In this document: positions 1 to 64,000 of the stretch, one piece after another
How the letters are laid out: each line of letters begins with the position of its first letter
How positions within the stretch are numbered: position 1 is the stretch's first letter
Assembly: GCF_006345805.1 (NCBI RefSeq)
Contig: NC_043002.1
Span: 79,050,001-79,114,000 of the forward strand
Reading direction: 5' to 3'
Length of the DNA: 64,000 bases
From: Octopus sinensis
Taxonomy: Eukaryota
Made by a program: the position numbers and the translations under genes
Notes under the pieces: generated by a model
Told to the model about the DNA's origin: nothing
Database searches by the model: none
The model's input: only the letters and a program-made list of their open reading frames with translations

Positions 1-337
1 CTGCAAAGTGATACTCTCATCGTTGCTTTCACGAGAAACTCTAATAAGAATGGAACATGTCCAGAATTGTCTCCCCCTATTGCCACAATCATTAAAATAA
101 TATTGGCGTTGTTCTCCATTGCCACTTATAGATTTTATTAATGCTCATCGTATTGAATATGTTGGCACTACCTTAACTATTGTGTCTTATGCGGATGGTG
201 TCTCTCAGTAATTAACCTCAATGATACATATTTTTTATATACTAAATTCATAGCTGAGTTCATCAACCACCTTCGAATTTGGAAAACAAAAATGTGACGT
301 TGACTGGTGGACAAAAGCAAAAGCTGGGTTAGCTGAA

Positions 338-753
338 GGATCTTTTCGGTTTGAATGGCAGTTTTTTTCTAGCGGTGTTATATGAAAATGTCACCCATAA
401 TTATGATCCTAGTATCGATCTATTGCATTTCAATCTGTTTTAGGGTTAGGGTTAGGGGTGGGGGAAGGGTATCTTTTTTTCTTCACAAATGTAAATAAAC
501 CCAATCTGTTTCTTAAACGAGGAACATATTCATACGCCACAGAATGTTTTCACCTCAATAGACGTCATTGATTGGTTGAAATTGCAGAAATTGAAGAAAT
601 AAACAACAAATATCTTACAAACTATAGAATTTTCTCAATAAAGCCAAGAGAAAAAGATGTTTTATAAACACATTCTACCAGTATACAAGGTTTAAAAGTG
701 TTTAGTTATGTGGAAATTATATAAAAAAACTGCCGTTCAAACCGAAAAGATCC
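338..753. mobile_element. 416-bp MITE with ~31-bp TIRs and 8-bp TSD
   Basis: Left GGATCTTTTCGGTTTGAATGGCAGTTTTTTT versus reverse complement of right AAAAAAACTGCCGTTCAAACCGAAAAGATCC (1 mismatch); TAGCTGAA duplicated at 330-337 and 754-761; internal (TTAGGG)3 at 440-457. Confidence 0.9.
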
Positions 754-1248
754 TAGCTGAAAGCTTTGCATTGTTTTTGCTAAATGATGCATTGTTCATT
801 AAACTGTTTTGAGGTCAAATAAGTAAGGGTACATTTTTATATTAACACCCGCACGATTTTCACTAACAAAAAAAACTCGGATTTTTTTTGCGTGGAATCA
901 AGTACTCTGACCTCCTAATATGCTGCAAATCCCTTATTTTGGTTTGGAAGAAAGGAGGGGGGGTCCCCCTCCACATCCCAGAATCATTGACATTTTTTTA
1001 TCGCTGAATGAATTCCTGTGACGTCCTAATGTACTACAAACCCTTTCTGGGATCCAAAAAACGGAGTGGGGTGAGGTGGAAGCCTCGGAAATTTCACCTA
1101 CACGGTTTTCACTAAGAAAATATATATAAATTGTGCCTAAATTAATTTTTGTGATGGGGATGGGAGAGAAAGATAAACGATTTAAATTAAATATATCTTA
1201 ATTGGTGTGTGAGAAAGTATATATATTCCGATGATAAAATATAGTATC

Positions 1249-1309
1249 TTTTTTTTTTTCTGTAGTTTCAGCTCAGAGCTGCGGCCATGCTGATGCACTG
1301 CTGTTTTAG
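1249..1309 (-). mobile_element. LINE/SINE 3' tail plus A11 fused to the U6 3' end
   Basis: Minus strand CTAAAACAGCAGTGCATCAGCATGGCCGCAGCTCTGAGCTGAAACTACAG-A11 resembles the GTGCTCCAGCATGGCCGCAG..CTGAAAC tail of the SINE family and the CR1-like LINE in this window. Confidence 0.75.
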
Positions 1310-1412
1310 AAAAATATGGAATGCTTCACGAATTTGCGTGTCATCCTTGCGCAGGGGTTTTGGTAATCTTCTCTGTATCGTTCCAATTTTAGAATATGTA
1401 CTGCCGTAGCTT
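1310..1412 (-). ncRNA. U6: U6 snRNA copy, probably a retro-pseudogene
   Basis: Minus strand reads CGGCAGTACATATTCTAAAATTGGAACGATACAGAGAAGATT...CCCCTGCGCAAGGATGACACGCAAATTCGTGAAGCATTCCATATTTTT, matching canonical U6. The ACAGAGA box is intact; TTAGCATGG is changed to TTACCAAAA. Confidence 0.95.
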
Positions 1413-1700
1413 AGTTTCAGTATTAAAGTGAAAATATCTGACTTTACAATAGAGATATTATTGTTTCACTTTTGACACGTAATACTGAAATAGTGGAGGA
1501 GATATGATATTGCTCTGGGCTGGCACTAGGCAGGAAGTTAAAACATTTTTTGGCCTATGACACTACATGGACCTTAAGTAAGGCATGTGTAAAATTTGAA
1601 TGAAATTGGTTGTGTAGTTCTCAAGTTTTAGGGATTCACACACACACACTCATGCACATTCTCATCTTTATATATATAGATATATATGTGTGTGTGTGTG

Positions 1701-2481
1701 TATTGTATGAAGGAACTGTAATGCAGGAAAATAAGAAAAGGTTCACCTACCTTCTCATTGCCTGCCATCCAGCTGTATTAATTTCAAAATTCACACCCTG
1801 CCCATCACACCTAATGAAAGCAACTGTTGATACCAATTCCTCTAGCTTGCTCTCGTCAAGTCTGTTCTTGGCAAATGCACCCAGGCAAAAGAACACGATC
1901 CTGGTCTTCCTTCCTTCACTTCCCCTTTCACCCTTCCTGCTCCAGTCAGGCCTCTTGACTATTGACGTCATAGCTCTTTCTTTCCAGCTCATCTCATCCC
2001 TACATTCCCCCCCCCACCTGATCTCCAAGATCACCTCTTCACTTTACTCTATGTCAAAATCTGCCATCCACCTGTGCTCAGTTGCTCTTCCTTGTCTATC
2101 TCAAGGTACAGCACCAGCATGCTTCCCTCCAGGTACAGGGCCACGAGATCTGCTACATCATTGATGCCTTGTAGCCTGGCCACTAATTTGATCTTACAGA
2201 TCCAGGCCACTATATCGCCTCTGCCGTAGAAAGGTCTAATGGCATCGCTTCCAATCCTTTTCTTCACTGCCATTGCGTGGAAGGGGATAACAACAGAGAA
2301 ATATACTCACACACTAGTGCCAAAATAGCTTGTTGTATGAGGAAACTGTAATGTGGGGAAATAAGAAACAGTTCACCTACCTTCTTGTTGTCGGCTGTCC
2401 AGGTGTACTGAGCCCAAAACTTTTACCCTGCCCGTTGCACCCAATGAAAGCAGCTGCTAATACCAATCCCTCTAGCTCTCT
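1701..2481 (-). mobile_element. Degenerate Gypsy-like LTR element remnant: gag fragment between two ~150-bp direct repeats
   Basis: Diverged direct repeats at 1701-1851 and 2331-2481; ORF 2049-2273(-) IRPFYGRGDIVAWICKIKLVARLQGINDVADLVALYLEG resembles the N-terminus of Gypsy gag (from recall). Confidence 0.55.
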
Positions 2482-2504
2482 CAGACATACCCTCAGTTGT
2501 GCAG

Positions 2505-3370
2505 TCAGCCACTCTCACCAGCTATGCTGATGATACAAAAGTATCTCAGACATACTAAACCTGCAAAATGACCTACATGCAATATACAAATGGGCTGATG
2601 AAAATAACATGCAGTTCAATGCTGATAAGTTTCAAGCACTTCAATATCAGCCCACAAACAGACCACAATCGGAATACATAGAACTATGGACTGGTGCAAT
2701 TCCACAATTAGAATCAGTGCATGATCTGGCAATCCACATGATAAATGATGCAACATTCCATGTGCATATTATCATGATGGCAACATTGTGGATAGATTCT
2801 TGGATCATCCAGAACCAGAAATAAAGATACTTTGCAACTCCTATGGAATACTTTTGTTCTCAGACATCTAGATTACTGCTCTTGACTGTGGTTGCCACAG
2901 AGCATCAAGCTGGTGGCGGAACTTGAGGCAATCCAGCACCACTACACAAAGAAGATTGACTTGGGGAAACAGATGAGCTACTGTGAGAGACTACAAGAAC
3001 TGAAGCTCTACTCCGTGGATAGATGGAAGATCCTGGAAAGTCTAACTCCCAACTTTGGAATTAAAAGTTATACAAACCATTGAACTGGATGGCACTGCAT
3101 AATACCCTGCTACAGCTTGGGTCTCAGGAGTCCACAACTGTTTAACATCCTGCTAAAAAACCTCAGAGATTTTCAAGTTGTAGACATGGAAACCTTCAAA
3201 AGCACCTGGACAAATTTCTATCTGAAATCCCAGATGGAGGCACAAAGAAGAGCAGATCCATTTAGCTTGCTTCTTCACCAAAGACAGTACAGAAAGGAGA
3301 CCCAAAAACACTGAAAGGGAGTGCTCCAGCATGGCCCCAGCCTTTGGCTGAAACCAGTAACAGAATAAAA
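2505..3370 (+). mobile_element. CR1/L2-like LINE, 5'-truncated, RT C-terminus and 3' tail, frameshifted
   Basis: SYADDTKV, MQFNADKFQALQY, ELEAIQHHYTKKI..MSYCERLQELKLYS motifs; ends in GTGCTCCAGCATGGCCCCAGCCTTTGGCTGAAACCAGTAACAGAATAAAA. Confidence 0.8.
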
Positions 3371-3443
3371 CAACATAAAATACATACACACACACGTATT
3401 TATGTATATATATACACACATATATACATACATACATACATAC

Positions 3444-3487
<44 letters not shown>

Positions 3488-8788: not shown

Positions 8789-8831
<43 letters not shown>

Positions 8832-9572
8832 CTCTTTTACTTGTTTCAGTCATTTGACTGCAGCCATGCTGGAACATTGCCTTAGGTCAAAGAAATCAAC
8901 CCAGGGACTTATTCTTTGAAGTTGTGGTGAAGAAACAGAGCCGATTGAGGCACATGTCGTGTAAGAAGTTGTGGCTACTATGCTGCTGCCGGTCACTTGA
9001 TGCAGGAAGTTCTCACAGGTTGTGCTTGCTGGTGAAGTAATTCACAAACAGTGAGATAGAACCTGTGCGATGGTTGTTGGTTGCTGTGTACGTAGAGAGA
9101 TGTTGTTGACAATGTTAAGATGGAGGTGATGAAGAAGGAGATTGCTGTATGATGTTAGTGGAGTGTAGATAAGTCTCCATGTGGCTGCTGGTGTTGTCAC
9201 TGGAACTGGCTGTGTGCTCTGTGGTCAGTGGTTAGACCTTAGAAGGTCTAGAACCGAAAGATGAATACGGTGTTGAAACTAGCTTTTTACAGGGACCAGG
9301 CAGCACAAACGGAGATTTAGAAGAGACTGTCTCACGTGACCTTATCAGAAAGCTGAGATTGGTTGGGTTGCACATTGGCGCATAATAGAGTAAGAGACAA
9401 ATTGTGCCAATACCAACCAATCAAAGTAGTGGACACAACAGGGTCCAAGCAGCTGAAGCCTAGCTGTTATCTACTACATCCGTATTTATGTATATATATA
9501 ACAGAGAGAAAGAGTCCGCTACAAACTGATAGAGAAAAAATGCAGTTTGGTAACGAAAATGTTAAGGGTTTA

Positions 9573-9930
9573 GGCACAGGCATGGCTGTGTGGTAAGGAG
9601 TTTGCTTCCCAACAACATAGTTTTGTGTTTAGTCCCACTGCATGGTACCTTGGACAAGTGTCTTCTACTATAGCCAACCAAAACCTTGTGAGTAGATTTG
9701 ATAGATGGAAACTGAAAGAAGCTTGTATGAATGTATGTGTGTCTTTGTTCTCCCACCAGTTGATAACTAGTGTCAGTGTATATATGGTCCCATTAGTTAG
9801 TAGCTCAGCAAATAGAATAAGTACAAGGCTTTAAAAAAATATAAGTACCAGGGTCAATTCATATTCTTCAAGCTGGTGCTCCAACATGGCCGCAGTCTAA
9901 TGATTGAAAGAAGTAAAAGAGTAGTAGAAA
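9573..9930 (+). mobile_element. SINE family A, near full length
   Basis: tRNA-like head, CORE-like ACCTTGGACAAGTGTCTT, tail GGTGCTCCAACATGGCCGCAGTC..GTAAAAGAG. Further partial copies at ~8653-8792, 12385-12545, 14120-14345 and 26130-26320. Confidence 0.85.
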
Positions 9931-9967: not shown

Positions 9968-10238
9968 GGTGAACTCACTTCCTGAGCGTTAAACTAATAC
10001 ATGTTTGTTGTTTACACACCCATCTTTTTTTGTTTTGTTTTGTAAATTCCAACTATATGACCTCGTGTGTACCGTTGGCGATTTTTTTTCCTCTGTCTTC
10101 CCTTCTCCTATGTTTCCGATGAAGAGCTCCGCTCGAAACGTCAAACCCTCCTTCTTTCCTGAGCGTCCAATAATACTATATTTGTTCCACGTCCTCGCGT
10201 TGTTGTGTTTTTTTGTGCTTTCTTGTTTTGATTAACTT
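9968..10238 (+). mobile_element. Penelope-type short repeat (pLTR-like), 1.5 monomers, with a hammerhead variant at 10112-10146
   Basis: GTTT-CCGATGA-AGAGCTCCGCTC-GAAACGTC-AAAC; flanked on both sides by (TA)n; homologous to 26906-27106. Confidence 0.7.
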
Positions 10239-10264
10239 TATATATATATATATATATATATATG

Positions 10265-12262
10265 ACACGGCTGTCCCTCATCCCAGGGTCTCAGAGGCCC
10301 ACACCTCCCACACCCTCAGAGTTGGCACATTGAAAGGTAGGTCGGGAGAGATTGTAGAGCTGCTTGAACGGAGACGTGTGGATTTATGCTGCATCCAGGA
10401 AGTAAGGTGGAGAGGAGGTTCCGCAGGCAAGGACCACAGGTACAAGATTTTCTGGGCAGGGAACACTGACGAGGTTGGGGGCGTGGGTATACTTCTTGTG
10501 GAGAAATGGGTAGATAAGGTAATCGAGGTAGTCAGAGTAAGTGACAAAGTAATTAAAATTAGATTAGTCCTTTACCATAGGTCAGCTACCATCATCTCGG
10601 CATATGCCCCTCAACCAGGGCTACCGGAAGGACAAAAAGACCAATTCTATGACACCCTATTGCGGACTACCTCGTTGACAAATGACAGTGACCTTCTCTT
10701 CGTGGCAGGTGATTTCAATGGACATGTTGGACAGCATGTCGGGGGCTTCCATGGCGTTCATGGAGGCTACGGTTTTGGCTCTCGTAATGAGGAGGGAACC
10801 AGCTGCTGGAGTTCTGCGATGCAAATGACCTTATGGTCTGCAATACCAACTTCAGGAAACCCCCCTCCACCTACCGTTCTGGCAGACACACTAGCCAGAT
10901 TGACTACATCCTTGCCAGAAAAAGGGAAAGAGGGCTGCTTATAAATGCCAAAACTTTCCAGGCGAAGAATGTACTCCTCAACATAGATTAGTAGTTAGCG
11001 ACTTCAGGATCAGAGCTAAATGGTTGCCCAGAAGACCAGCTTGGAGGAGAAGGGTCTGGAAGCTTAAATCCTGCAAATGGACAGAGATTTAGAGACATAC
11101 TACTCGAAGCCTTTGACGAAATAGAAGGGATATAGCTTCACTTAATGTGGAAGACAACTGGAGATTTCTACGGGACAATCTGCTGACAGCCACTGACCAG
11201 ATCTGTGGATGGAGCAAAGTACCATCTCGACCCAGAGTAACATGGTGGTGAACACTGTGGTTGACAGGGCTATTAGACAAAAGAGACAGGCTTGGAAGGA
11301 CTGGAAGAACGGTGGTAGCAGGGAATTATATCAGACAGCCAGAAGGGAAGCTAGGAGACAGTTTTATTTAGCCAGAGGGAAGCGGATAAGAAAGAATTTG
11401 CCAATGTTCTGGGCCGTGAGGATGTAAGACTTGAGGTATTTCGTGTTGCAAGACAGTGTGTGAGAGAGAATCGTGATGTGGTAGGAGAAAGTGTGTTCGC
11501 ATGGATGATGGTTCACTTGCGCTAAATGAGGATGCAAAGAGAGAGGTTTGGAGATGCCACTATGAAAGGTTGCTGAATAAAGAAAATGAATGGGATAAAG
11601 AGAGTCTGCCGAATGTCAACCCAACAGAGGGACCAGCCATCCGAGTTGAAAATTCTTTGGTAGTTAAAGCAATTAGAAGCATGAAGACAGGGAAAGCCCC
11701 AGGCCCATCAGGAATTACTGCAGAGATGCTCAAAATATCTGGCAGTGTCGGCTATAACCTAGTCACCCATATAGTCAACCAGGTGATACACGAAGGAGTC
11801 ATACCCAATGACTGGTGTAGCAGCATACTAGTCAACTGCTACAAAGGTAAAGGTGATGCCCTAGATACAAATAATTACAGAGGTATCAAGCTGTTGGATC
11901 AGGTAATGAAGGTTACGGAGAGGGTCATAGCCCAACTAATTAGAGAGAGAGTTAGTTTAGATGAGATGCAGTTTGGGTTCGTGCCAGGGAAAAGTACCAC
12001 TGATGCATATTCCTGGTAAGGCAGCTGCAGGAGAATACCTAGCCAAAGATAAGCCCCTGTACCTGGCTTTCGTTGACATGGAGAAAGCCTTTGATAGGGT
12101 CCCCCGATCCCCTTATCTGGTGGTCAATGAGGAAACTAGGGATAGATGAATGGCTGGTGAGGGCTGTGCAAGCCATGTACAGAGAGATGCCGTAAGTAAG
12201 GTTAGGGTTGGCAACATGTACACAGAAGAATTCAAAGTAGAGGTTGGGGTCCACCAGGGTTC
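10265..12262 (+). mobile_element. RTE-clade LINE (APE endonuclease plus RT), frameshifted, cut by an assembly gap
   Basis: LCCIQEVRWRG, SAYAPQ and GDFNGHVG (APE); KAPGPSG, NYRGIKLL, QFGFVPGKSTTDA, AFVDMEKAFDRVPR and VGVHQG (RT). Confidence 0.95.
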
Positions 12263-12362
12263 NNNNNNNNNNNNNNNNNNNNNNNNNNNNNNNNNNNNNN
12301 NNNNNNNNNNNNNNNNNNNNNNNNNNNNNNNNNNNNNNNNNNNNNNNNNNNNNNNNNNNNNN
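12263..12362. other. Assembly gap (100 N)
   Basis: Run of N. Confidence 1.
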
Positions 12363-14009: not shown

Positions 14010-14344
14010 GCACGACAACCCCCGGCTTCAACCAATATCCTCAGGGTACCGATGCTTTGAGTGTGAATTTGGCAGTCGGTAATTGTGCGTTAGCCCGTTG
14101 ATTACGTGTGTTTGTGTGTATGTGCGCGATTTTGCTTTTGTTCTTGTCTTCCATCACTGCTTGACAACGGGTGCAGGTTTGTTTATTTCCCAGCAACATA
14201 GGGGTTCGCCAAAAGGAGTCGATTGAATAAGTCCCAGATTTAAGAAAAGAATGTCTACTAGGTTCGATTTGTTAAACCAAATTCTTCAAGACTGTGCACC
14301 AGCATGACCGCGGTCCAATGACTGAAAGAAGAAAAACATCAAAG

Positions 14345-17751: not shown

Positions 17752-18115
17752 GGCACAGGAGTGGCTGCGTGACACCTTGGGCCAGTGTCTTCTACTATAA
17801 CCTCAGGCCGACCAAAGCCTTGTGAGTGGATTTGGTAGACGGATACTGAAACAAGCCCGTCGTATATATGTATATATATATCTATATATATATATGTATT
17901 TGTGCGTATATGTTTGTGTTTGTCCCCCCCAACATTGCCGATGTTGGTGTGTTAAAGTCTCCGTAACTTAGCGATTCGGCATAAGACACCGATAGAATAA
18001 GTACTAGGCTTATAAAAAGTAAGTCCTGGGGTCGGTTTGCTCGACTAAAGGCGGTGCTCCTGCATGGCCAAAGTCAAATGACTGAAACGAGTAAAAGAAT
18101 AAAAGAGTAAAGAGT
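17752..18115 (+). mobile_element. SINE family A, full length
   Basis: Head GGCACAGGAGTGGCTG, CORE-like CACCTTGGGCCAGTGTCTT, internal (TA)/(TG), tail GGCGGTGCTCC.GCATGGCC..GACTGAAAC.AGTAAAAG. Confidence 0.85.
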
Positions 18116-21100
18116 AGAACATATATTTGTATATATATATATATATGTGGGTGTGTGTGTGTGTGTATGTGTGTGTGTGTGTGTGTGAGTGAGTGTGTGT
18201 GTGTGTGTGTGTGCGTGTGTGTGTGTGTGTGTGTCATGGCACTCCGTCGGTTACGACGACCAGGGTTCCAGTTGACACGATCAACGGAACAACCTGCTCG
18301 TGAAATTAAAGTGCAAATGGCTGAGCATTTTACAGACACGTGTACCCTTAACGTAGTTCTCGGATGATTCAGTGTTAAACAGAATGTACAACAGAAACAG
18401 GAAGAAAGAGTGAGAGAAAGTTGTGGTGAAAGAGTACAAACTATTATTATTTTTTTTTTTTTGTCATAAACTACCAATCAAGTACTAGGCTGTTTTGTAT
18501 GGGCTAGAGCCTTTCTCTCAATTGCTAAACTCGTACCTAAACAAGAAACTATTCCTTTTTCGTCTTTTTTTTAATTCAGTGACTAGGCTGCGGCCTTACT
18601 GAAATACAGTATATGAAGGGTTTTATCGATCTAAGTACTTTCTCAGTTTGGTACTTTGTTTAGAAAGTTACAAGGTATAAAGATACACAGCATGAACACA
18701 CCACGGATATGAGTCAATATATACACAGGCCCGAATACAGAGATATACATATATATGTGTGTGCATGCATACGAATATATATGTATATACATATACATAT
18801 ATGCATATATAGATATACATATACATGCTCTGTTACTGTCTTGGAACTTTCTAAGAAGACGGCGTCAACAGCATTCGAAATCAAATAGTATAGATTTGAA
18901 ACTACGTGCACTAATGCATTTAATCCAATACTTCATTATCCTCCCTATTTACACTACCCACATATACGACTAATTAAGCACAGTAATTATACAGCTGACG
19001 AATTACTACAGCTTCCTATCAATAAATGTAACAATTTTTCATGGGAGGTTGTTATCAGTTATGCAAATCTAAAGCTTAAGTTATCCTTTCTTCTCTTTTA
19101 TTTTGTAAAACAAATTTACAAGCTTAGTTTTGATGGGTAAAAGATAGGTATATGGCTGCTAAACCGAAACATTACCAGCTTTGATAGGCTCAATTTGCTT
19201 TACGGACTATAAAACTTCTGCTGTATCTGTAACGTGAAATATGCTTGGTATTTCAGCCATACTCATTAAATACTTATTCCTTGTAGTTATGGATTTGCGT
19301 TTTTTCTGGAGCTTTTACTACTTATCGGAGCTTTCTTTCTCCCAAACCCCGCTATCGTGAAATATCTCAGTTATATAAATAAACAACAAATTCTATAGAG
19401 TTTTATAGTTATTCGCTGTTTGTGTTTTAAGATAATTATTCTTTGGTTTATGGAGCAACAAATTGCTTGGAAGAATAACTAATGTATGTGTGGGTGGAGA
19501 GCCCGTATGTAGTGGCTTGAACTTATAGGGATAGTAGTTAGATATTTCTCAAATCGCACACTACTGTTTTATACAAGAGAATGATACATTGATAAAAGAA
19601 GTGCAAGACAAATCTCTACAAAGACAGAACGGATCAGTAGCGATTGAGAGCTAAACAAGAACTTTTGAAAAAAAGACTATATAATGATACCATTATTATG
19701 ATAATGCTGGTATCTAAAGATACTAATATTATCATAATATATAGAGATATTACTGCTACCTAAAGATGTAAGTAATGTCTGTACAATATGATAATGTTTT
19801 TATTTAAAATAATATCATGAATAATCAGTGTTTCAGATCCTGATAGATTTTTATTGCTTATTGTTTCACTTTTTGTATGGTTTTTCTGCTTCAGTTTGTA
19901 AAACAAAAACAACGCGCTGTAGAATTAGAAAATTATTGTTTGAAGCAATTACGCAAGACACTTAATGGCTAAACACAAGCACGCACACACAAACACAAAA
20001 CCAATGTACACCCTATAAACTTCTACCATAAATTCTTTATCTATTGAACAAAAGAAACCAGGAGATTAATTTCTTAATTATGGCATACGTTAGAATAATT
20101 TAACAATGTGTCTATTAAACTTGTGCGGTAGAGACTGAACTATTGAGTTTATTATATATAAGAGTAATTTATCTAGTAAGCCATTATGCGCGTTCCATAT
20201 CTGTGAAACTTGCTATATTACAACATTAATCAGTCCATAAAAATTATGCAAGAGACAGTTAGATATAGATTTTCTTTTCAGCTTGCCTCATGTTCAGTTT
20301 CCCAGCAGAATATATTCATTTGACTCAAATTTATTAAAACAGGATGCTTTTTCATAACCTCTTTGATCCATTGGAATCATAAAATTAATCGTTAATTATA
20401 TATTTTTAATAACACGGAATCAAACGTGTAAGAGATTAATTAATCTCATTAGATCATAAATATTATCCACTTGTTTAATTATTAACCATTCAGAATAGAT
20501 GGGCAGCGTTTATGGCCGCTGCAAATAATCCAACTCCAGACTGTGGCAATCCATTAGAAGAGACTTTTAACTCATATAACATTACAAGAAAGTCTTGCTT
20601 GTCTCCATGAATCAAAGAAAATAGTCATTTTGTGATAGAAAACAACTCTAAAGTGAAATTATTGATTGAACAGAAATAATCATAATCAGTTCTTATGCTT
20701 CAATGGCGAAAGAAACCAAAGAAAACTTATGGACTCAGCGAGAGAGAATATCTCGAATTGATCTGATATCGTAGTTTCATAAGATACCATATTGTACATG
20801 AAATAAAATTATTCTGCCTATAAAAGCAACGCGATATACACAGCGGGTTCGAAACCCAACGGCAACATGACTAAGTAATCCAGTGCATTAACCACTTGAC
20901 CACGTCATACACTTCACCTTTAATTCTTACGAATTACATGTTCTTTTTTTGTTGTCATTTAGTCCCATATCAACACTGATTGAAAGAATGAACTATCAAA
21001 TGCTTCGAGCCGTGACATTCCTGTTTTAGCTTTGTAAGTCTTGGACTCTACCAATGACTCCCAAACTGTTTCTAGCTGCTGCCCTCTTGGCACCCAGGCC

Positions 21101-22104: not shown

Positions 22105-22511
22105 GGCGCAGTAGTGGCTGTGTGGTAAGTAGCTTGCTAACCAACCACATGGTTCCGGGTTCAGACCCACTGCGTGGCATCTTGGCAAGTGTTTTCTGCT
22201 ATAGCCCCGGGCCAAACAATGCCTTGTGAGTGGATTTGGTAGACGGAAACTGAAAGAAGCCTGTCGTATATATGTATATATATATATGGTATTTGTATGG
22301 TGTGTGTTTGTGTGTCTGTCCCCCTAGCATTGCTTGACAACCGATGCTGGCGTGTTTACGTCCCCGTCACTTAGCGTTCGGCAAAAGAGACCGATAGAAT
22401 AAGTACTGGGCTACAAAGAATAAGTCCCGGGGTTGATTTGCTCGACTAAAGGCGGTGCTCCGCATGCCGCAGTCAAATGACTGAAACAAGTAAAAGAGTA
22501 AAGAGTAAGAG
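22105..22511 (+). mobile_element. SINE family A, full length
   Basis: GGCGCAGTAGTGGCTGTGTGGTAAG..GGTTCCGGGTTCAGACCC..CATCTTGGCAAGTG..GGCGGTGCTCCGCATGCCGCAGTCAAATGACTGAAACAAGTAAAAGAG. Confidence 0.9.
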
Positions 22512-26126: not shown

Positions 26127-26366
26127 TAGTTATTTGTGTGTGTTTGTTCCTGCACATCCCGACATCGTTTGACAACTGATGCTGCTGTGTTTACGTCCTC
26201 GTAACATAGGGGTTCGGGGCAAGAGACCGACAGAAGAAGCGCCAAGTCCAGGGGTCATTTCTTCGACTGAAAGGCGGTGCTCCAGCATGGCCACAGTCAA
26301 ACGACTGAAACAAATAATAGAGGAATATACATATATATACACACACACACACATCTGTGTGTGTGT

Positions 26367-41082: not shown

Positions 41083-41513
41083 AGCTTAGGAGTAGCTGTG
41101 TGTTAAGTAGCTTCCTTACGAACCACATGGTTCTGGGTTCAGTTTCACAGCGTGGCACCTTGGGCGAGTGTCTTCTACTATAGCCTAGAGCCGACCAAAG
41201 CCTCGTGAGCGGATTGAGTAGGCGGAAACTGAAAGAAGCCCGTCGTATATATGTATATACATACATATATATAAATATAGGTATGTATGTGTGTGTATAT
41301 GTTTGTGTGTCTGTGTTTGTCCCCTCAACATCGCTTGACAACCGATGCTGGTGTGTTTACATGCCCATAACTTGGCAGATCGGCAAAGGAGACCGATAGA
41401 ATAAGTACTGGGCTTACAAAGAATAAGTCCTGGGGATGATTTGCTCGATTAAAGGCGGTGCTCCAGTATGACCACAGTCAAATGGCTGAAACAAATAAAA
41501 GAGTAAAAGAGTA
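41083..41513 (+). mobile_element. SINE family A, full length
   Basis: Collinear with 22105-22511. Confidence 0.9.
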
Positions 41514-56005: not shown

Positions 56006-56883
56006 GAACAATGATTATAAAGAATGAAAGATAGAATAGGTTAAATATTTGGAAGGAGGAGGAAAGAAGCATTTTTAATGATTAAGACTTAGAACTAGGA
56101 CTGCTTTGGCGCTTTTGCTCTTTGATATTAATCATTCTCTCAGAATTACTGAAAATATTTCCTCCTAATTTCTAACCACTTGAGAAACATTTAGCTCCGT
56201 GCTTTTTCTACTGTTTTGTCTCCCAATGGCACATAATATTGCAATAATAGATAATGTGTCTGGAAGATTATCAGGGCTCTTTGTGTTTGGTAAGTTAAAT
56301 ATAATTGACTGAAAGATTCAACAACTTTAGAAACGTCCTCAATTTTAATCTTCAGTTATTTACAGTTTGATTTAATTAAACTAAAATTGCTGTTGTCGAT
56401 TTAATTAACTAAAATTGCGAACGTGGAAGACAGCGTAGAAATTTGGATGTAGTTCTGGCAGTTCCCAGGGATTCACCTACCCTTAAGTATTGAACGATTG
56501 TCGTTGCATAGAATGAAACTACATTCGAAAGAATTCAGGATGATACACATACCGCCATTATCATACCTAGAAGAGGTACTCCCTACTGACTTGTATAAAT
56601 CACTTACAGATACACTGCCTCTGACTTACAAGTACGTTGTTTCAACTTTCTACCTTTTTGACCACGACTATAATGGCCTCTGATTCTCAGAGTTGGCTGA
56701 GCTCGTGTCAATTCTTCTTCGTCATTTGTGCACTCATCACAGTTGTTCTGCCCAACATCCAGTGGCCCAGCAACAAAATTTGCTAAGGGGGTGAAAACCC
56801 GGGTCCTAATTTTTTTTATGAAAAATGTGGATTTTTCCAGTGTTAACATTAAAACAAATGCAGATATGATAATTTTTATTATT

Positions 56884-57360
56884 ATGAGGGTCGGCTGAAA
56901 TGTTCATAATCTGAGCAAGACACTCTCAATGGAATGTGACCAAATGAAGTTCATTTTCTAACATAGTTCCTCTTACTGTCCACACACTTCCATTAGTAGT
57001 TGCAGTGCTTGGGTCTCACTGGTGAAGGAGCTTTTCTGTTGATCAAAATGGTCATCAACAACAGATAAGATGTTCTCATCATAGTGATACTGGTGCTCAG
57101 CTGAGTGTTTTTCTATGTTGGGAAACAGATGATAACCAGAAGGAACCAAATCACTAACACAGAGAGCATGATCAACCGGTTCAAAGCCAGTCACATACAG
57201 CAGCCATTGAAACCAAGGATTTGTTTGCTGAAGCATTGTCCTAATGAAACAGTTTTTCTGGGTGTTTGGTCTTGATAGCCTTTCATAACTGCCTTAGGAA
57301 GTTGGTATTGAAATTTTCCATTGATGGTATGATCATTTTGAAGATAGCCAATAAACACAA
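56884..57360 (-). mobile_element. mariner 3' fragment with TIR
   Basis: TATGAGGGTCGGCTGAAATGTTCATA TIR; minus-strand DLVPSGYHLFPNIEKH..VVDDHFDQQ is a decayed form of DLAPSDYHLFP. Confidence 0.75.
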
Positions 57361-57679
57361 TATTTTTTGCATTAATGCATAGTATATATAATAATGTTAA
57401 GTATATTTTGCAAATTAAAATGTTTAATTTTGGAAATGTATCAAGCAGAGCTAAAATAAGCAGTAAAAATACAAATAGCAAGTATTTCAAAATGTGGGAC
57501 ACTACATGACAAAAACTAACAAAAAAGGGAAGAAAATAGTGCTGCTTGTATTCCAAAGGTACAATGAGAAGGCTCAGGAGAAGGATAGAGAGATGGGATA
57601 GAGGGAAGGAAGTTAGAAGGAAAGAAAAGAATGAAAGTGAAAAGATAAATTGGGGATCTGAAATGAGTACTAGGCAGGA

Positions 57680-57872
57680 AATTGGCCCCTGTGCCGGTAG
57701 CACGTAAAAATAGCACCCACTACACTCTCAGAGTGGTTGGCGTTAGTTAGGGCATCCAGCTGTAGAAACACTGCCAGATCAGACTGGAGCCTGGTGCAGC
57801 CTCCTGGCTTCCCAGGCCCCAGTCGAACCATTCAACCTATTCTAGCATGGAAAATGGACATTAAACGATGAT
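57680..57872 (+). mobile_element. SINE family D
   Basis: GCACGTAAAAATAGCACCCACTACACTCTCAGAGTGGTTGGCGTTAG..GGGCATCCAGCTGTAGAAAC..AAACGATGATG. Confidence 0.8.
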
Positions 57873-58329
57873 GTCTTAACTATGCATTGGTCAAGTAGAA
57901 AAACGATGAGTGACAAAAATTGGATTGTCTTTTGGTATTAAAAAAGTGAAGAAAGAGAGTAGAGAAGGTTCGGAAAGAGCAAGTAGGAAGAAAAAGAGAG
58001 TGCGGAGAAATAAGAGAGTAAAGATAGACAGTAGGTAGTTGACAGAGATGGACAGAGGAAGAAATGGAAGGCAGTAAAGAGAGAAAAGCAGCAGATAGGT
58101 AGAGAGGTAGATAGAGGGGAGAGGAGAAGGACAGAGAAATAGATAGAAAAGAGAGACAGTCTTGCACCAAATATTGAACACTGCGTAGGGTACCACTGAG
58201 TGGGAACAGAAGTGAGTGTGTGACATTACATTGACTAACAGACCTAAAATACTGCACTGAAAGTAAAAAAACACACATATATAATGATAAAGGAAATTGT
58301 TGTATACAGTGCTCAGGTGCACTACAACT

Positions 58330-59155
58330 AAAAAGGAAAAAAATGGCCACCAGGTGTACTGTTGGCGGATTTCAGGACACATGGAAGTTTTGAAGGATGT
58401 AGTGTCTTGACAGCTAACAACTGATGCATGTGGTTTATTCCATGTTTCTGCAATTCTGAGCATGAAAAATTGTTTCCGAAAGTCATGGGTGCTGTGTTGT
58501 TTTTGATTTTATAAGCATGTCCGTGAGTGTTTGTCATATGGAATTCAAAAAGTTACCCAAGGTTGTTGTTGTTGGAAATATGGTGGATAATCTTGTGGGT
58601 GTCAATCAAGACAGTTGCCAGACGTCTGGGCTTCAATGTATCCACGTCCAGGAATACAAGACGTTCAGAGTATGGTAGATGTCTGACGGTGGGTATTTGC
58701 TTTGTTGCACATTTCTGAACAGTTTCCAGGAGATTTATATGCTGAGAAAGAGAGGGGTTCCAGACTGGTGATGCGAATTCCAAGTGTGGATATACCATTG
58801 TTGTATGCAGTTTTAAATAGATAACTGGAGAGTGGCTGACAAAGGTCTTACTGAGTGATGCTAGCATCCCATCAGCCTTTTTGACATTCTTAGATATGTG
58901 GTTTGTCCAATGCAGATTGTTGTTTACAATAATACCCAGAACATGTCCACCACAAGACTTCTTGAGGTAGGTGTTGCTGAAGCATTATTTAAAAGCTGGT
59001 TTTTTCCTTCCAAAATGCATGGTGACACACTTGTCTACAGATAGCTTGAGTTGCCAGTCAGAGGTCCACTGCAGCAGTGTATCCAGATCTGATTGCAGGA
59101 TAGTATGTTCTTTTTATTTCAGGGTACAGCTTGGTATCATCTGCATATTTCAACA
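58330..59155 (-). mobile_element. CR1-like LINE 3' fragment
   Basis: LHTTMVYPHLEFASPVWNPSL..LLETVQKCATK..LPYSERL..RRL; ADDTKLY near 59140. Confidence 0.8.
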
Positions 59156-59157
59156 CT

Positions 59158-60961
59158 AAATTTTCCAGGAAGTTTTCCAGCAAATTTCCCGGAAGTTAGA
59201 AAATCCCCGGAACGTCCCAGGAGGTTTTCGACGAAATTTCCAGGAAGTTAGAAAATCCTCGCAACTTTCCAGGACGTTTTCGACCAAATTTCTCGTAAGT
59301 TAGAAACCGTCGGATATTTACAGACACTTTTCGAATAAGCATCCCAGAAGTTAGAAAACCCTCGGAACTTCCCAGGTAGTTCTCGACCAAATTTCCCGGA
59401 AGTTAGAAAATCCTCGGACATTTCCAGAAACTTTTCGACCAAATATCCCGGAAGTAAGAAAATCATCGGAACTTTTTGGGAAGTTTTCGACCAAGTTTCC
59501 CAGAAGCTTGAAAATCATCGGAACTTTCCAGAAACTTTTCGACCAGATATCCCTGAAGTTAGAAAATCATCGGAACTTTCCAGAAACTTTTCGACCAAAT
59601 ACCCCTGAAGTTAGAAAATCCTCGGAACTTTCCAGAAACTTTTCGACCAAATATCCCTCAAGTTAGAAAATCCTCGAAACTTCTCGATGGAATTTTCGAC
59701 CAAATTTCCCGAAAGTTAGAAAATACTCGTAACTTTCAGGGAACTTTCCGACCAAATATCCCGGAAGTTAGAAAATCCTCGGAACTTCCCAGAAAGTTTT
59801 AGACCAAATTTCCCGGAAGTTAGAAAAACTCGGATCTTTCCAGGAAGTTTTCAACCAAATTTCCCGGAAGTTATAAAATCTTTGGAACTACCCAGGAAGC
59901 CTTTGACGAAATTTCCCGGAAGTTAGAAAGTCATCGGAAATGTCCAAAAAGTGTTCGGCCAAATTTCCCTGAAGTTAAAAATCCTCGGAACATTCGATGA
60001 CATTTTTGACTAAATATCCCGGAAGTTAGGAAATCCTCGGAGCTTTTCAGGAAATTGTCAACCAAATTACGAGGAAGTTAAAACATCCTCGAAAGGTTCG
60101 AGGAAATTTTTGACCAAGTTTCCTGGAATCTAGAAATTCCGCGGAAATTTCCAGAAACTTTTCGTCCAAATTTCCCGGAAGTTAAAAAACCCTCAGAACT
60201 TTCCAGAGACGCTTCTGCCAAATACCCGGTAAGTTAGAAAATCATCGGTACTTCCCAGGAAGATTTCGAGAAAATTTCCATGAAGTTAGAAAATCTTCGG
60301 GACTTCCCGATGAGATTTTTGACCAAATTTCCCGAAAGTTACGAGTAACTTTCGGGGAACATTTCGACCAGATATGCTGGAATTTAAAAAATCCTCGGAA
60401 CTTTCCAGGAAGTTTTCTATCAAATTTCCCGGAAGTTAGAAAATCCTCGGAACTGTCCAGGAAAATTTCGACCAAGTATCCCGCAAGTGAGAAAATTCTC
60501 GGAACTTCCCAGAAAGTTTTCGACCAAATTTTCCGGAAGTTAGAAAGTTATCGGAACTCCCCAGGAAATTTTTGACCAAATTTCCCAGATGTTATAAAAT
60601 ATAGGGAACTTTCCAGGTTTTCGACCAACTTTCCGGGAAATTAGAAAATCCTCGGTACGTTCCAGTAAATTTTCTGTCAAATTTCCCGGAAGTTAGAAAA
60701 TCCTCAGAACTTTCCAGGAAGCGTTTGATCACATTTCCTGGAACTTAGAAAATCCTTGTAACTTTCCAGGAAATTTTTGACCAAATATCCCAGAACTTAA
60801 AAAATCCCCGGAAGTTCCCAGGAACATTTTGACCAAATTTACCGGAAGCTAGAAAATCCTCGGAACTTCCCAGGAAGTTTTCGATCAAATTTCTCGGAAG
60901 TTAAAAAATCCTCGGAACTTTCCAGGAAATGCTTGATCAAATTTCTCGGAAGTTAGAAAAT
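59158..60961. repeat. 52-bp satellite, ~35 copies
   Basis: Consensus AAATTTCCCGGAAGTTAGAAAATCCTCGGAACTTTCCAGGAAGTTTTCGACC. Confidence 0.95.
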
Positions 60962-61329
60962 TTAACTGAAGGTATTTTACCAGTGGTCATTCCTTGTAAC
61001 CCTTCAATTTCTTCTATGAGACCGGATGCGTAAGAACATTAAAATTTAAGCATTAATTTATACTGCTCAGAACTAGCGTTTTCCCTAAAAATAAAACTAA
61101 CTACCGGTTCCCTTGTCATGAATGTTCATAGGATGCAGCCTATGAGTTTGCTGCATTTAAAGGTTAGTTTGATAAATATGGCTGATGAAAAATGCATCAT
61201 TTGACATGATTACACCCAAGTCCTGTATGTTTATTAGTGCTCTGAATCACTATGTTATCTTGTGTCAAATATTGCGATTTGGGTGAATTTGTTTGTAACG
61301 AAGATGCTGAAACTTTGATGTACTAATTT

Positions 61330-61990
61330 TCGTATTTTTTCTCGTTTAGATCCTAGCGATCGATATTCTTGTGTAATTAATTCCCTGATGTATACGACGT
61401 ATTACAGGTAACTTAGAGAGAAATCCATTTGCAGTGATAGGTTGACTCCTACCATATGGTGAGTTAAAAAACCATTCTTCGACTTTTCCTAAATTATGAC
61501 AGATGATTCCATGATCAGTCTTGTCAAACACCTTAACAATATCAAGATTTTAACAGTCAATGATCTTTCCCCTTAAGAGATTATTAGAGGTAGTGTTATG
61601 ATGCTGTAAGAATTGTGACAGGCAACTTCGTTCAGTCCGAAACCTAAACCTATACCGAGTGTCATCTAAGTTGTCTTCCTCCAGGAATGTTGTTACTTTT
61701 TGTCTTTGGACAAGGCATTGGATAATTTTAGACGTGTAAGACGTGAGGGAAACAGGTCTGTAATTTTTAGCTTCAGCACTGCTATCTCCTTTGTACCTAT
61801 ATAGGTTTTATTATAGCTTCTTTCAATAGTCTCGGGAATATGGCGGTATCTGGCGACTTTTGAAACAGTACCTTTAATGATTTCATGAGCTGGTTTTTGC
61901 ACGTTTTGAGCAATATAACTGGAATACTATTTGGTACAGATGCTGAGTTTGGGCCTAAATCATGAATAGTCGCAAGTATATCAACTTCCA
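61330..61990 (-). mobile_element. CR1-like RT fragment (older family)
   Basis: GPNSASVPNSIPVILLKTCK, KEAIIKPI, KNYRPVSLTS and FDKTDHGII across broken frames. Confidence 0.75.
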
Positions 61991-63060
61991 TGATACTAAT
62001 TTTAAGTTGTGTCTCTGCACTTGAGTTGTGGGATCAAAGACTTCGCTTGGATTATGCACGGGACTGCGATACGAACAGAGAATGCGGCCTTCCACCTGTT
62101 GAAACAAATGTGTCGGGGATAGAGTTTGCGATCATGCCTACGAAGACCTCTATCTGGCGCAGGGGTGACAATCTCCGCAAATGGTAGGCTTACATGTCCG
62201 TTGAATATGTTGAAAGTCGGATGAGGTCTCCCTGCATCCTCCGTCGTTTGAGTGAAGGCAATGCCAACCGTCGGAGATGTTCCTCTTAGACAAGCCCGCG
62301 CCCATTCGGGTGGCCAAGTGCTGAACCCATTCCAGGTGCTGAATGTCTTTCTGGAGATATGGGTTTGAGGTATGGATGTAATATTCGAGGATGGGTCGCA
62401 CTAGAGTGATATATACAGGCCAAAAGACATACATTGAAAGGTTAGCAAAGGATCGTTGGATGAGGAAAAGATTCCTTCTGGCTTTGTTCGCCGCCTCGAT
62501 ACCCTGCCGTGGTAGTTTGAAAGTAGTATCGATCATTATGCTGAGATCCTTTTCTTCACTGACCATCTTAAGATGCTGATGTTTCTGGCCAATTGTCAAG
62601 GGAGAGTTTGGAGGTGAACCTATTGGCAAATGGCTGCATTTTGAGGCGTTCAAGTTCAGATTCCATTCTTCCGCCCAATTCCAAGCTCGGTTCAGCGACA
62701 ATTGGAGTATGTCGTATTGATTCATAGGTGAAGCAAGTTTGACGTCATCTGCAAATAGGAGAACTCTTCCATCAAGAAAATCTGACAGGTCGTTGATATA
62801 GAGAAGGAAAAGTATTGGCCCCAGCACCGACCCCTGGGGAACACCGCTGCATGCATTCGTCTCCGCTGAGAGATCACCATTTATCTGCACCCAAAAGGTT
62901 CGATAGCTCAGGAAGGAAGAAATCCGCAAAGTCAACAATGGATGAATCTTGAATGCTCGAAGTTTGTGCAAGAGAAGTCAGTGATTAACGGAGTCAAATG
63001 CCTTTGCGAAGTCCAAAAATACCACGCCCACCAAGTCTTTTTCATCCATTCTTGTAATCT
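61991..63060 (-). mobile_element. CR1-like LINE RT region, 5'-truncated
   Basis: 273-aa ORF with SGVPQGSVLGPILFLLYINDL, LLFADDVKL and LVRPILEY; upstream VFLDFAKAFDSVNH. Confidence 0.9.
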
Positions 63061-63069
63061 TGTAATTCT

Positions 63070-63400
63070 TGGTCCTTGTAATCCATCCTTCTTGAAGGAG
63101 AAGATTTGTTAGGCAAGATCTTCAGGGTAGAAATCCATGCTGCGAGTCGGATATTTTTTAGTACCATATAGAGATAATTGTATAATGCTTTGGTTGGAAA
63201 TAGCTGTGGGAATGACATGATCATTGTGAATAAAAACAAAGTCGAGTATGCTATTTTCCCCTAATTGGACAGGTAATAATTTGTTGTATGGGAAATTCTT
63301 TTGTTGTATCGAGGAAAGGGTTCATATCAACTTCAAAGAACTTGAGAGAGATGACAGACTGAGAGAAAACAAGAACCTTCACACATTTTCAGCATTGCAA
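63070..63400 (-). mobile_element. Possible LINE APE-domain remnant
   Basis: Minus frame GENSILDFVFIHN resembles the end of an APE domain; heavily decayed. Confidence 0.35.
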
Positions 63401-64000
63401 GATTTTGAAGTTATTTTTGTCAGAACAGAGCTGTCTTCAAGAATCCAAGTAATGCTATGTATTGAAGAGTAGCCGTAGATGCTGGTCATATTGTTGTTCT
63501 TGCTGTTTGCTGCCACTGTTGTTGTTGTCACATACTTTTTATTTTGACGCTACTTTGCTTCAGAAGTTGGTTAGTCATAAATTCCCTTGGGGATTTTAAG
63601 CCCAGCTTCATCACTTTTATTTATTTATTTTCGTTCTTTGTTTTTGCTTCTTATACAGATAATTTTTTAGACACTATTTTCTGAAACTGGTAAAATTATG
63701 TAGGGTGTGCAAATTTTGATCTTGCACCACCTGAAAATTCCAAAGGGTGCAGGTGCACCCACTGCACCCCCTGTTCCCGGGCCCTTGCCAACATCCCAAC
63801 ACCTCGGCCATCAGGAATTTTCCTTCCAGATCATGTCTTATCCACATGTGTTAACTTGCAAAATTCAACAGAAACATTGACGTCATCAGTTACAAGGGTC
63901 TAGAAGAACCGACAAAAGCCACAGGATCTGCCCTTTCCTCCAAACCACACAAATAAAATTATGATATGTCTTTAACAGCTATAAAAACAAAGCGCTTTCA

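What the first reader, a model, noticed from the sequence alone, without database searches (positions are those of the whole stretch)
1249..1412. U6 snRNA fused at its U5 end to a LINE/SINE 3' tail: chimeric retrocopy or a U6-headed SINE
Seen: on the minus strand a near full-length U6 ends in exactly TTTTT, followed without a spacer by a ~50-nt tail (GTGCATCAGCATGGCCGCAG..CTGAAACTA) and A11. The tail is homologous to the 3' end of the CR1-like LINE at 3316-3370 and to the family A SINE tail. The AGC catalytic triad region is replaced (TTAGCATGG to TTACCAAAA), so this copy is unlikely to splice. Known: U6/L1 chimeras in mammals join U6 at 4-5 terminal U's to LINE RNA, and snRNA-headed SINEs (SINEU) exist in crocodilians. 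Inference: the same process may operate here with a CR1/L2-type partner, or U6 may have founded a SINE. I could not identify a clear TSD. CTGAAACTA also occurs just 5' of U6, a possible microhomology.
Basis: partly seen in the sequence, partly recalled or inferred. Interest (0 to 1): 0.75.

Follow-up and report, generated by a model that had tools for sequence, protein, structure and literature searches.

The report
Dead U6 copy fused to LINE tail
This is a broken, retro-copied U6 spliceosomal RNA gene fused at its natural end to the last ~50-60 bases of an octopus LINE retrotransposon; such by-products of LINE reverse transcription are already known from vertebrates, so it is a real but fairly ordinary find.

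Summary
On the minus strand, U6 snRNA (Rfam 93 bits) ends in TTTTT at 1310. A LINE/SINE-type 3' tail follows directly (1309-1260), then A11 (1259-1249).

- The first 6 nt of U6 are missing; U6 homology is 1410-1310.
- 11 nt (CTAAAACAGCA) lie between T5 and GTGCATC. They align only loosely to the tail.
- CTGAAACTA is a significant 9-nt direct repeat (1420-1412 and 1271-1263) and is a candidate target-site duplication.

The genome is octopus-like. The tail keeps both hairpins of the family, with compensatory changes. It is closer to LINE tails, in the window and in an Octopus vulgaris copy, than to the tRNA-derived SINE tails.

Best reading (0.75): a one-off, dead-on-arrival chimeric retropseudogene. 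It was made when the LINE reverse transcriptase copied a LINE tail and then continued on U6, or copied a pre-ligated U6-tail RNA.

The U6-headed SINE reading is not supported. A T5 Pol III terminator sits between head and tail, U6 has no internal promoter, and there is one copy in about 85 kb. Genome-wide copy number could not be measured with these tools.

U6 chimeras with L2, RTE and their SINEs are already described in platypus and Anolis, so this is a new member of a known kind.

The parts
1412..1420 (-). Upstream copy of the 9-nt direct repeat CTGAAACTA. It is separated from the U6 homology by one A (1411). Candidate 5' target-site duplication.
   Evidence: the longest exact match between the 40 nt upstream of U6 and the region 3' of T5. 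P = 0.0064 for a match of 9 nt or more between a random 40-mer of the window and the 50-nt tail.
1310..1410 (-). U6 snRNA retrocopy, nt 7-107 of U6. The ACAGAGA box is intact at 1376-1370. The copy ends in T5 at 1314-1310. The first 6 nt of U6 are absent.
   Evidence: Rfam RF00026, 93.3 bits; the model hit 1417-1310 includes 7 non-homologous nt. (8 mismatches to human U6 over nt 7-107; nt 1-6 all mismatch).
1358..1364 (-). Disrupted AGC catalytic-triad region. AGCATGG is replaced by ACCAAAA (changes at U6 nt 54, 57, 58, 59).
1299..1309 (-). 11 nt, CTAAAACAGCA, directly after T5. Probably the 5' edge of the LINE-derived tail (compare CTGAAAGGGA in the LINE and CTAAAGGCG in the SINE). Not significant alone, so untemplated or other origin is not excluded.
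   Evidence: alignment A1; the nhmmer alignment begins only at 1301; the shared LINE/SINE module begins at LINE 3310.
1260..1298 (-). Core of the LINE-type 3' tail, GTGCATCAGCATGGCCGCAGCTCTGAGCTGAAACTACAG. Hairpin 1: GUGC-AUCA-GCAU (1298-1287, outer pairs 1301-1300 with 1285-1284). Hairpin 2: CAGCU-CUG-AGCUG (1281-1269).
1263..1271 (-). Downstream copy of CTGAAACTA. It overlaps the conserved CTGAAAC of the tail, so it can be tail-derived, target-derived, or both (microhomology).
1249..1259 (-). A11 run. Either the A-rich 3' end of the LINE tail or pre-existing target DNA.
   Evidence: sequence; the O. vulgaris LINE copy continues CTGAAACTGGAAAAATCAAAATC after the same motif.
2520..3370 (+). 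Degenerate, 5'-truncated LINE fragment (YADD motif to 3' end) of the family that supplied the tail. The tail module shared with the SINEs is 3310-3370.
   Evidence: frame-shifted RT C-terminus; homologues P0001 and P0002; LINE/SINE homology starts at 3310; 74% identical over 2844-3386 to an O. vulgaris LINE copy.

Best explanation
This is a single, non-functional chimeric retropseudogene.

Proposed mechanism:
1. An octopus LINE of the 'stringent' type started target-primed reverse transcription on a LINE 3' tail. Such a LINE's reverse transcriptase recognises a structured 3' tail, which it shares with the local tRNA-derived SINE.
2. It copied roughly the last 40-60 nt, covering both hairpins.
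3. Synthesis then continued on U6 snRNA from its natural U5 3' end. This happened either by template switching, or because U6 had already been ligated to a tail fragment (the RtcB route shown for U6/L1).
4. Synthesis stopped 6 nt short of the U6 5' end, and the cDNA was integrated.
5. The 9-nt repeat CTGAAACTA on both sides is most simply a target-site duplication. Its 3' copy coincides with the tail's CTGAAAC. That would mean the nicked target DNA base-paired with the tail RNA to prime synthesis, possibly inside an older tail remnant.
6. The copy had no promoter and later accumulated about 8% substitutions, including loss of the AGC triad.

Shown: U6 identity and extent, tail homology and hairpins, the exact junction, the direct repeat.
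Inferred: target-primed reverse transcription (TPRT), the switch or ligation step, the priming by microhomology.
For: - U6: 93.3 bits, ends at T5. nt 1-6 are absent, so this is not a decayed gene with its 5' end.
- The tail is found by a profile that excludes it, E 8.9e-6.
- It keeps both family hairpins: 96% of cells are paired, against 20-45% when the partners are slid. Two pairs in hairpin 2 carry compensatory changes: CAGUC/GACUG in SINEs, CAGCC/GGCUG in the window LINE, CAGCU/AGCUG here.
- The tail is nearer to LINE tails than to SINE tails. Window LINE 26/33 core positions; SINEs 21-24/33. An O. vulgaris LINE copy of the same family matches 46/56 and shares TGAGCTGAAACT plus an A-rich end.
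- The 9-nt flanking repeat has P = 0.006.
- With about 10 tails per 64 kb, an independent tail starting within 2 nt of the U6 end on the same strand is expected with P about 4e-4.
- Precedent: in platypus and Anolis, U6 chimeras with L2, RTE and their SINEs are mostly 5'-truncated U6 plus a short LINE piece, with 1-9 bp TSDs (PMC4476161). RtcB ligation of U6 to L1 RNA is shown in PMC6789731.
Against: - Only one locus was seen. No empty orthologous site and no second copy could be examined.
- The TSD is ambiguous because its 3' copy lies inside the tail homology. The A11 may be tail or target.
- The tail is only about 79-84% identical to the two LINE tails at hand, so the true donor subfamily was not seen.
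- The first 8-11 nt after T5 are not demonstrably tail-derived.
- The LINE's clade and its 'stringent' behaviour are inferred from the shared structured tail, not tested.
Confidence: 0.75

Rival explanations
1. The unit is one copy of a U6-headed SINE-like retroposon family. It would be analogous to SINEU: a U6 head, a LINE-derived tail, amplified by the LINE machinery.
For: - The head-plus-LINE-tail architecture is that of a SINE. The tail keeps the hairpins that the LINE enzyme presumably recognises.
- The junction falls within about 1 nt of where the local tRNA-SINE body meets the same tail module.
- Copy number in the genome could not be measured.
Against: - T5 lies between head and tail and would terminate Pol III before the tail.
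- snRNA genes have no reported internal promoter (PMC4494074).
- Rfam finds a single U6 in 64 kb and none in 20.7 kb of O. vulgaris. The tRNA-SINE has 8 copies in the window.
- The head is plain U6 with no family-specific body.
Confidence: 0.07
2. Two independent events: an older U6 pseudogene, and later a severely 5'-truncated LINE or SINE tail that happened to insert right after it.
For: Tails are dense here, about 10 per 64 kb. Short 5'-truncated copies are usual for this kind of LINE.
Against: - The tail would have to start within a couple of bases of the U6 end, on the same strand: P about 4e-4 per U6 copy.
- The U6 has no poly(A) or TSD of its own.
- The only significant direct repeat brackets U6 and tail together.
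Confidence: 0.04
3. The same chimera mechanism, but the tail donor was a SINE RNA rather than the LINE RNA, as in U6-Mon-1 and U6-AnolisSINE2.
For: - SINE transcripts are likely far more abundant than LINE RNA.
- CTAAA right after T5 matches the SINE's CTAAAGG.
- Some diverged SINE-like tails carry GGCCGCAGC and an A-run (18609-18558).
Against: - Core identity is higher to LINE tails, 26/33 against 21-24/33.
- Hairpin 2 has the LINE-type 3-nt loop and the C-G pair.
- The motif TGAGCTGAAACT is shared with the O. vulgaris LINE copy.
- No SINE body sequence is present.
Confidence: 0.15

Closest known systems
U6-L2 / U6-Mon-1 chimeras of platypus and U6-L2, U6-RTE, U6-AnolisSINE2 chimeras of Anolis (Doucet et al. 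2015, PMC4476161)
   Same: A U6 copy, usually 5'-truncated, joined at its 3' end to a short 3' piece of a LINE that needs its own tail, or of its SINE partner. No free poly(A)-only U6 copies. Short TSDs of 1-9 bp linked to priming on the tail repeat.
   Different: The host is an invertebrate (octopus). The LINE family and its two-hairpin tail are different and unnamed here. Only one copy was seen.
Mammalian U6/L1 chimeric pseudogenes (Buzdin 2002; Garcia-Perez 2007; Moldovan et al. 2019, PMC6789731)
   Same: The junction is at the terminal oligo-U of mature U6. The product is a dead pseudogene. Template switching or RtcB ligation explains the join.
   Different: L1 is a 'relaxed' LINE with poly(A) priming. 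Its L1 pieces have very variable length and its TSDs are long. Here the piece is just the structured tail module.
SINEU of crocodilians (Kojima 2015, PMC4494074)
   Same: An snRNA-derived 5' part on a retroposon body. Probably born from a template switch onto an snRNA.
   Different: SINEU heads are U1 or U2, not U6. SINEU are multi-copy families with subfamily structure and master copies. No amplification was seen here.
Tripartite chimeric pseudogenes of Magnaporthe (PMC2104539)
   Same: More than one template jump during LINE reverse transcription. A second jump could in principle explain the CTGAAACTA piece 5' of U6.
   Different: A second jump onto a tail RNA should bring that RNA's A-rich 3' end next to U6. 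That is not what is seen.
The tRNA-derived SINE of this same genome (8 copies in the window)
   Same: Carries the same LINE-derived tail module, beginning at nearly the same point as in the U6 chimera.
   Different: It has a tRNA-like head with a B box, a body with an internal microsatellite, many copies, and the CAGTC/GACTG form of hairpin 2.

Membership tests
U6/LINE chimeric retropseudogene | 5' part is a sense copy of U6 snRNA ending at its natural oligo-U 3' end | tested here: met
   RF00026 at 93.3 bits, model positions up to 105/105, ends TTTTT at 1310.
U6/LINE chimeric retropseudogene | 3' part is the 3' end of a LINE (or partner SINE), same orientation, abutting U6 without genomic spacer | tested here: met
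   The core 1301-1263 is significant. The first 8-11 nt after T5 are only loosely alignable.
U6/LINE chimeric retropseudogene | One target-site duplication brackets the whole chimera | tested here: inconclusive
   The 9-nt repeat CTGAAACTA (P 0.006) brackets U6 plus 38 nt of tail, but its 3' copy lies inside the tail homology. No repeat follows A11.
U6/LINE chimeric retropseudogene | Empty site in a related genome or individual | not testable with these tools
   No eukaryotic genome can be searched by DNA. Exact-ORF look-ups were not on record. The O. vulgaris locus L122 is a paralogous TE copy, not the syntenic region.
snRNA-headed SINE (SINEU-like) | Many copies sharing the same junction and diagnostic substitutions | tested here: inconclusive
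   One U6 in 64 kb and none in 20.7 kb of O. vulgaris. The public scans were uninformative.
snRNA-headed SINE (SINEU-like) | Can be transcribed through head and tail (internal promoter, no terminator inside) | tested here: not met
   T5 at 1314-1310 lies between head and tail. No internal promoter is reported for snRNA genes (PMC4494074). This rests on sequence plus literature, not on an assay.
snRNA-headed SINE (SINEU-like) | 3' tail shared with a partner LINE | tested here: met
Functional U6 snRNA gene | Intact 5' stem-loop, ACAGAGA box and AGC triad | tested here: not met
   ACAGAGA is present, but the AGC triad reads ACC and nt 1-6 are missing.
Described LINE 3' elements in Rfam (e.g. UnaL2 3' element) | Match of the tail to a curated covariance model | tested here: not met
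   at E up to 5 nothing but U6 and microsatellite noise appears in 1150-3450.
   Pfam gives no hit for the C-terminal 190 aa. There are only two unnamed homologues. A different LINE in the window is named 'jockey' by its O. vulgaris homologue.

The most novel reading that the evidence does not exclude
The U6/tail join falls within about 1 nt of the point where the body of the local tRNA-derived SINE meets the same LINE tail module (LINE 3310/3311). If that is not chance, this tail has a preferred breakpoint. It could be a template-switch hot spot just past the two hairpins. Or it could be a discrete cleaved tail RNA with a 5'-OH that is ligated to small RNAs. In either case heads (tRNA, U6, others) would be fused recurrently at that point. 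The locus would then be a by-product of the process that gave birth to the dominant octopus SINE, and a genome-wide census could catch further heads on the same tail.
Probability: 0.12. Interest if true: 0.6.

Novelty: new member of a known kind. Interest (0 to 1): 0.3.

Why it matters
The locus suggests that joining U6 to a retrotransposon tail also operates in a cephalopod, with a LINE that shares a structured tail with its SINE partner. This process is well documented for L1 in mammals and for L2 and RTE in platypus and Anolis. I found no report of it in molluscs among the papers searched. Octopus genomes are dominated by SINEs carrying this same tail. A census of U6-tail and other small-RNA-tail chimeras could date LINE activity and show how new SINE heads are captured. 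As a single dead pseudogene it has no likely function of its own.

Tried and rejected
1. The metagenome-contig scan with a U6-end/tail pattern returned 120 or more loci, and all hit one conserved bacterial gene. None has a U6 body.
2. The genome-contig scan with a longer U6+tail pattern gave 0 hits.
3. Exact look-ups of ORFs next to U6 (2049-2273, 1610-2164) were not on record, so the same locus could not be fetched from other assemblies.
4. The protein search with the LINE C-terminus gave only two short ENA contigs.
5. A protein search included the antisense peptide that spans the U6/tail junction. It found only U6-antisense ORFs from other organisms. The apparent similarity in P0123 belongs to a different repeat on a Tara Oceans scaffold.
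6. L122 (O. vulgaris) first looked syntenic with window 56.8-63.8 kb. Collinearity stops at the ends of a ~7 kb LINE, so it is a paralogous TE copy, not the orthologous region.
7. The alternative TSD AGATA../ATATTTT was rejected. It is a 7-nt AT-rich match, 27 nt from U6 and 8 nt past the A-run.
8. A first null model for the repeat was inflated by poly(A) and (TA)n matches, and was redone on the non-repetitive tail.
9. Alignment A2 put the U6 tail one column out of register in hairpin 2. A1 was used for the pair counts instead.
10. The tail has no match to Rfam LINE 3' elements.

Full report
**What is there**

Read on the minus strand, the sequence from 1420 down to 1249 is:

- CTGAAACTA (1420-1412)
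- A (1411)
- U6 (1410-1310)
- CTAAAACAGCA (1309-1299)
- GTGCATCAGCATGGCCGCAGCTCTGAGCTGAAACTACAG (1298-1260)
- A11 (1259-1249)

Rfam's U6 model matches 1417-1310 at 93.3 bits (E 1e-22) over the full model. It is the only family reaching its gathering score in the window.

Against human U6, written from general knowledge, nt 7-107 show 8 mismatches. Four of them are clustered at nt 54, 57, 58 and 59 and destroy the AGC triad. The ACAGAGA box is intact. The six positions where U6 nt 1-6 should be all mismatch. So the copy is 5'-truncated and is not a worn-out gene. It ends in exactly five T.

**The tail**

The motif GTGCTCCAGCATGGCC-N11/12-CTGAAAC recurs at three kinds of site in the window:

- the end of a degenerate, frame-shifted LINE fragment (2520-3370);
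- the end of eight copies of a roughly 390-nt SINE with a tRNA-like head;
- a more diverged SINE-like copy at 18609-18558.

An nhmmer profile built from six of these tails, without the U6 tail, finds 1301-1263 at E 8.9e-6.

RNAalifold predicts two small hairpins, and the U6 tail folds into both on its own. On the seven-sequence alignment, 96% of cells are paired, against 20-45% when partners are slid by 1-3 columns. Two pairs of hairpin 2 carry compensatory changes: CAGUC/GACUG in SINEs, CAGCC/GGCUG in the window's LINE, CAGCU/AGCUG in the U6 tail. With seven related sequences this is modest evidence. It still suggests the U6 tail was copied from a working variant of the element that is not itself in the window.

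No Rfam LINE 3' element matches the tail.

**Which donor**

- In the core from GTGC to CTGAAAC, the U6 tail matches the window's LINE at 26/33 positions and the SINEs at 21-24/33.
- It has the LINE-type 3-nt loop.
- A 20.7-kb stretch of Octopus vulgaris chromosome OX597821.1 (L122) holds a LINE copy. That copy aligns to window 2844-3386 at 74% identity through the ORF end, the 3' UTR and the tail.
- Its tail shares TGAGCTGAAACT with the U6 tail, followed by an A-rich (AAATC)n end, and matches at 46/56 positions.

The donor was therefore most likely LINE RNA of a subfamily not seen here. A SINE donor is not excluded.

**Organism**

An RT ORF at 62150-62971 has its best hit (76%) to a protein named 'RNA-directed DNA polymerase from mobile element jockey [Octopus vulgaris]'. 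A ~7-kb LINE is shared with O. vulgaris at 80-90% identity. The window is from an octopus or a close relative. The species was not determined.

**The junction**

- LINE/SINE homology begins at LINE 3310 in three of six pairwise alignments.
- The first base after the U6 T5 aligns to LINE 3311.
- This coincidence is interesting but weak. The first 8-11 nt after T5 are not significantly tail-like on their own, and the boundary rests on one degenerate LINE copy.

**The flanking repeat**

CTGAAACTA occurs 1 nt upstream of the U6 homology and again inside the tail, where CTGAAAC is the most conserved tail motif. Only 0.64% of random 40-mers of this window share 9 nt or more with the 50-nt tail, and here the match also sits next to the U6 5' end. 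There are three possible readings.

- **(a) It is the target-site duplication.** The nicked bottom strand (5'-TAGTTTCAG-3'OH) base-paired with CUGAAACUA of the tail RNA and primed cDNA synthesis. The top strand was cut 9 nt downstream. The A11 then belongs to the target, which may itself be the remnant of an older tail. That would explain both the 9-nt identity and the tail-like A-rich continuation. This is my preferred reading. Short TSDs linked to priming on the tail are what Doucet et al. report for U6-L2 chimeras.
- **(b) The tail runs to A11 and the upstream 9-mer comes from a second template jump.** This is less likely. A jump onto a tail RNA's 3' end should place the A-rich end, not CTGAAACTA, next to U6.
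- **(c) Chance.**

Only an empty site can decide between them.

**SINE or one-off**

Against a U6-headed SINE:

- The T5 run between head and tail is a Pol III terminator.
- snRNA genes have no reported internal promoter (Kojima 2015).
- Only one U6 occurs in 64 kb and none in L122, while the tRNA-SINE has eight copies in the window.
- The head is plain U6.

Against two independent insertions:

- With about 10 tails per 64 kb, a tail starting within 2 nt of the U6 end on the same strand has P of about 4e-4.
- The U6 has no poly(A) or TSD of its own.

I therefore commit to a one-off chimeric retropseudogene at confidence 0.75. It was formed by template switching from the LINE tail to the U6 3' end during target-primed reverse transcription, or by reverse transcription of a U6-tail RNA joined beforehand by RtcB-type ligation (Moldovan et al. 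2019). The two sub-mechanisms cannot be told apart from DNA.

**What is known**

- Doucet et al. 2015 found U6-L2 and U6-Mon-1 chimeras in platypus, and U6-L1, U6-L2, U6-RTE and U6-AnolisSINE2 chimeras in Anolis.
- They concluded that LINEs needing their own tail make U6 pseudogenes only as chimeras. These are mostly 5'-truncated U6 plus a short LINE piece, with 1-9 bp TSDs. The present locus fits that description point by point.
- I found no paper reporting such chimeras in molluscs, but the library is not exhaustive.
- Hence: a new member of a known kind, of modest interest.

**Limits**

No tool here searches eukaryotic genomes by DNA.

- The prokaryote genome scan found nothing.
- Three protein searches and five contig look-ups did not reach the orthologous locus.

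Copy number, the empty site and the exact donor subfamily therefore remain open.

Noticed in passing
window 3328-3338 versus U6 consensus nt 53-63: The LINE tail contains AGCATGGCCCC, identical to the U6 segment that carries the AGC triad (AGCAUGGCCCC). The SINE tails share 9 of these bases. In the chimeric U6 copy this very segment is the one replaced by ACCAAAACCCC. It may be coincidence (roughly 1e-3 to 1e-2, judged after the fact).
   Followed up: partly
window 8826-8895(-), 9860-9923, 14281-14343, 18037-18104, 22438-22503, 26260-26325, 41441-41508, 18558-18609(-): Copies of a roughly 390-nt SINE. It has a tRNA-like head (GGTTCnGGGTTCAG B-box-like motif), an internal TG/TA microsatellite and the LINE-type two-hairpin tail. 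Most copies sit next to (TA)n or (CA)n runs. ARAGORN calls no tRNA in the window.
   Followed up: partly
window 56760-63787 (-) and L122 8513-15691: A ~7-kb LINE-like element shared with Octopus vulgaris chromosome OX597821.1 at 80-90% identity. It has an RT ORF at 62150-62971 and contains an array of about 36 copies of a 52-nt tandem repeat (59147-61048). It lacks the tail motif studied here, so it is a different LINE family.
   Followed up: partly
window 1700-2500: Two partial copies, in tandem, of a gag-like coding sequence on the minus strand (ORFs 2049-2273 and 1747-2034; second copy around 2330-2500). It is 58% identical to the N-terminus of a gag-aspartic protease protein (P0126). It abuts the 5' end of the LINE fragment.
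   Followed up: partly
window 440-457: Three perfect TTAGGG telomere-type repeats followed by G-rich sequence. This is an interstitial telomere-like tract.
   Followed up: no
window 314-371 and 720-772: An inverted repeat of about 55 nt (GGATCTTTTCGGTTTGAA[T/C]GGCAGTTTTTTT core, nearly perfect) flanking about 350 nt. It could be a MITE-like element or a foldback.
   Followed up: partly
window 12263-12362: A run of 100 N (assembly gap) inside an RTE/L1-like LINE with an endonuclease domain (10213-10944) and the start of an RT (11501-12019).
   Followed up: no
L123 (Tara Oceans scaffold TARA_SAMEA6031743_METAG-scaffold_177496), 412-3251 (-): Five degenerate U6 copies (54-95 bits) in 3.3 kb. Each is followed by a conserved unit beginning TTTTCAGCAATATCAAGTG. 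This is a clustered U6-plus-downstream repeat in an unknown marine eukaryote, unrelated to the octopus tail.
   Followed up: partly
L001-L120 (marine metagenome contigs): The pattern TTCCATATTTTT-N15-CAGCATGRCC is a conserved stretch of a widespread bacterial gene in marine metagenomes. It is a trap for anyone searching U6-tail junctions with short patterns.
   Followed up: partly
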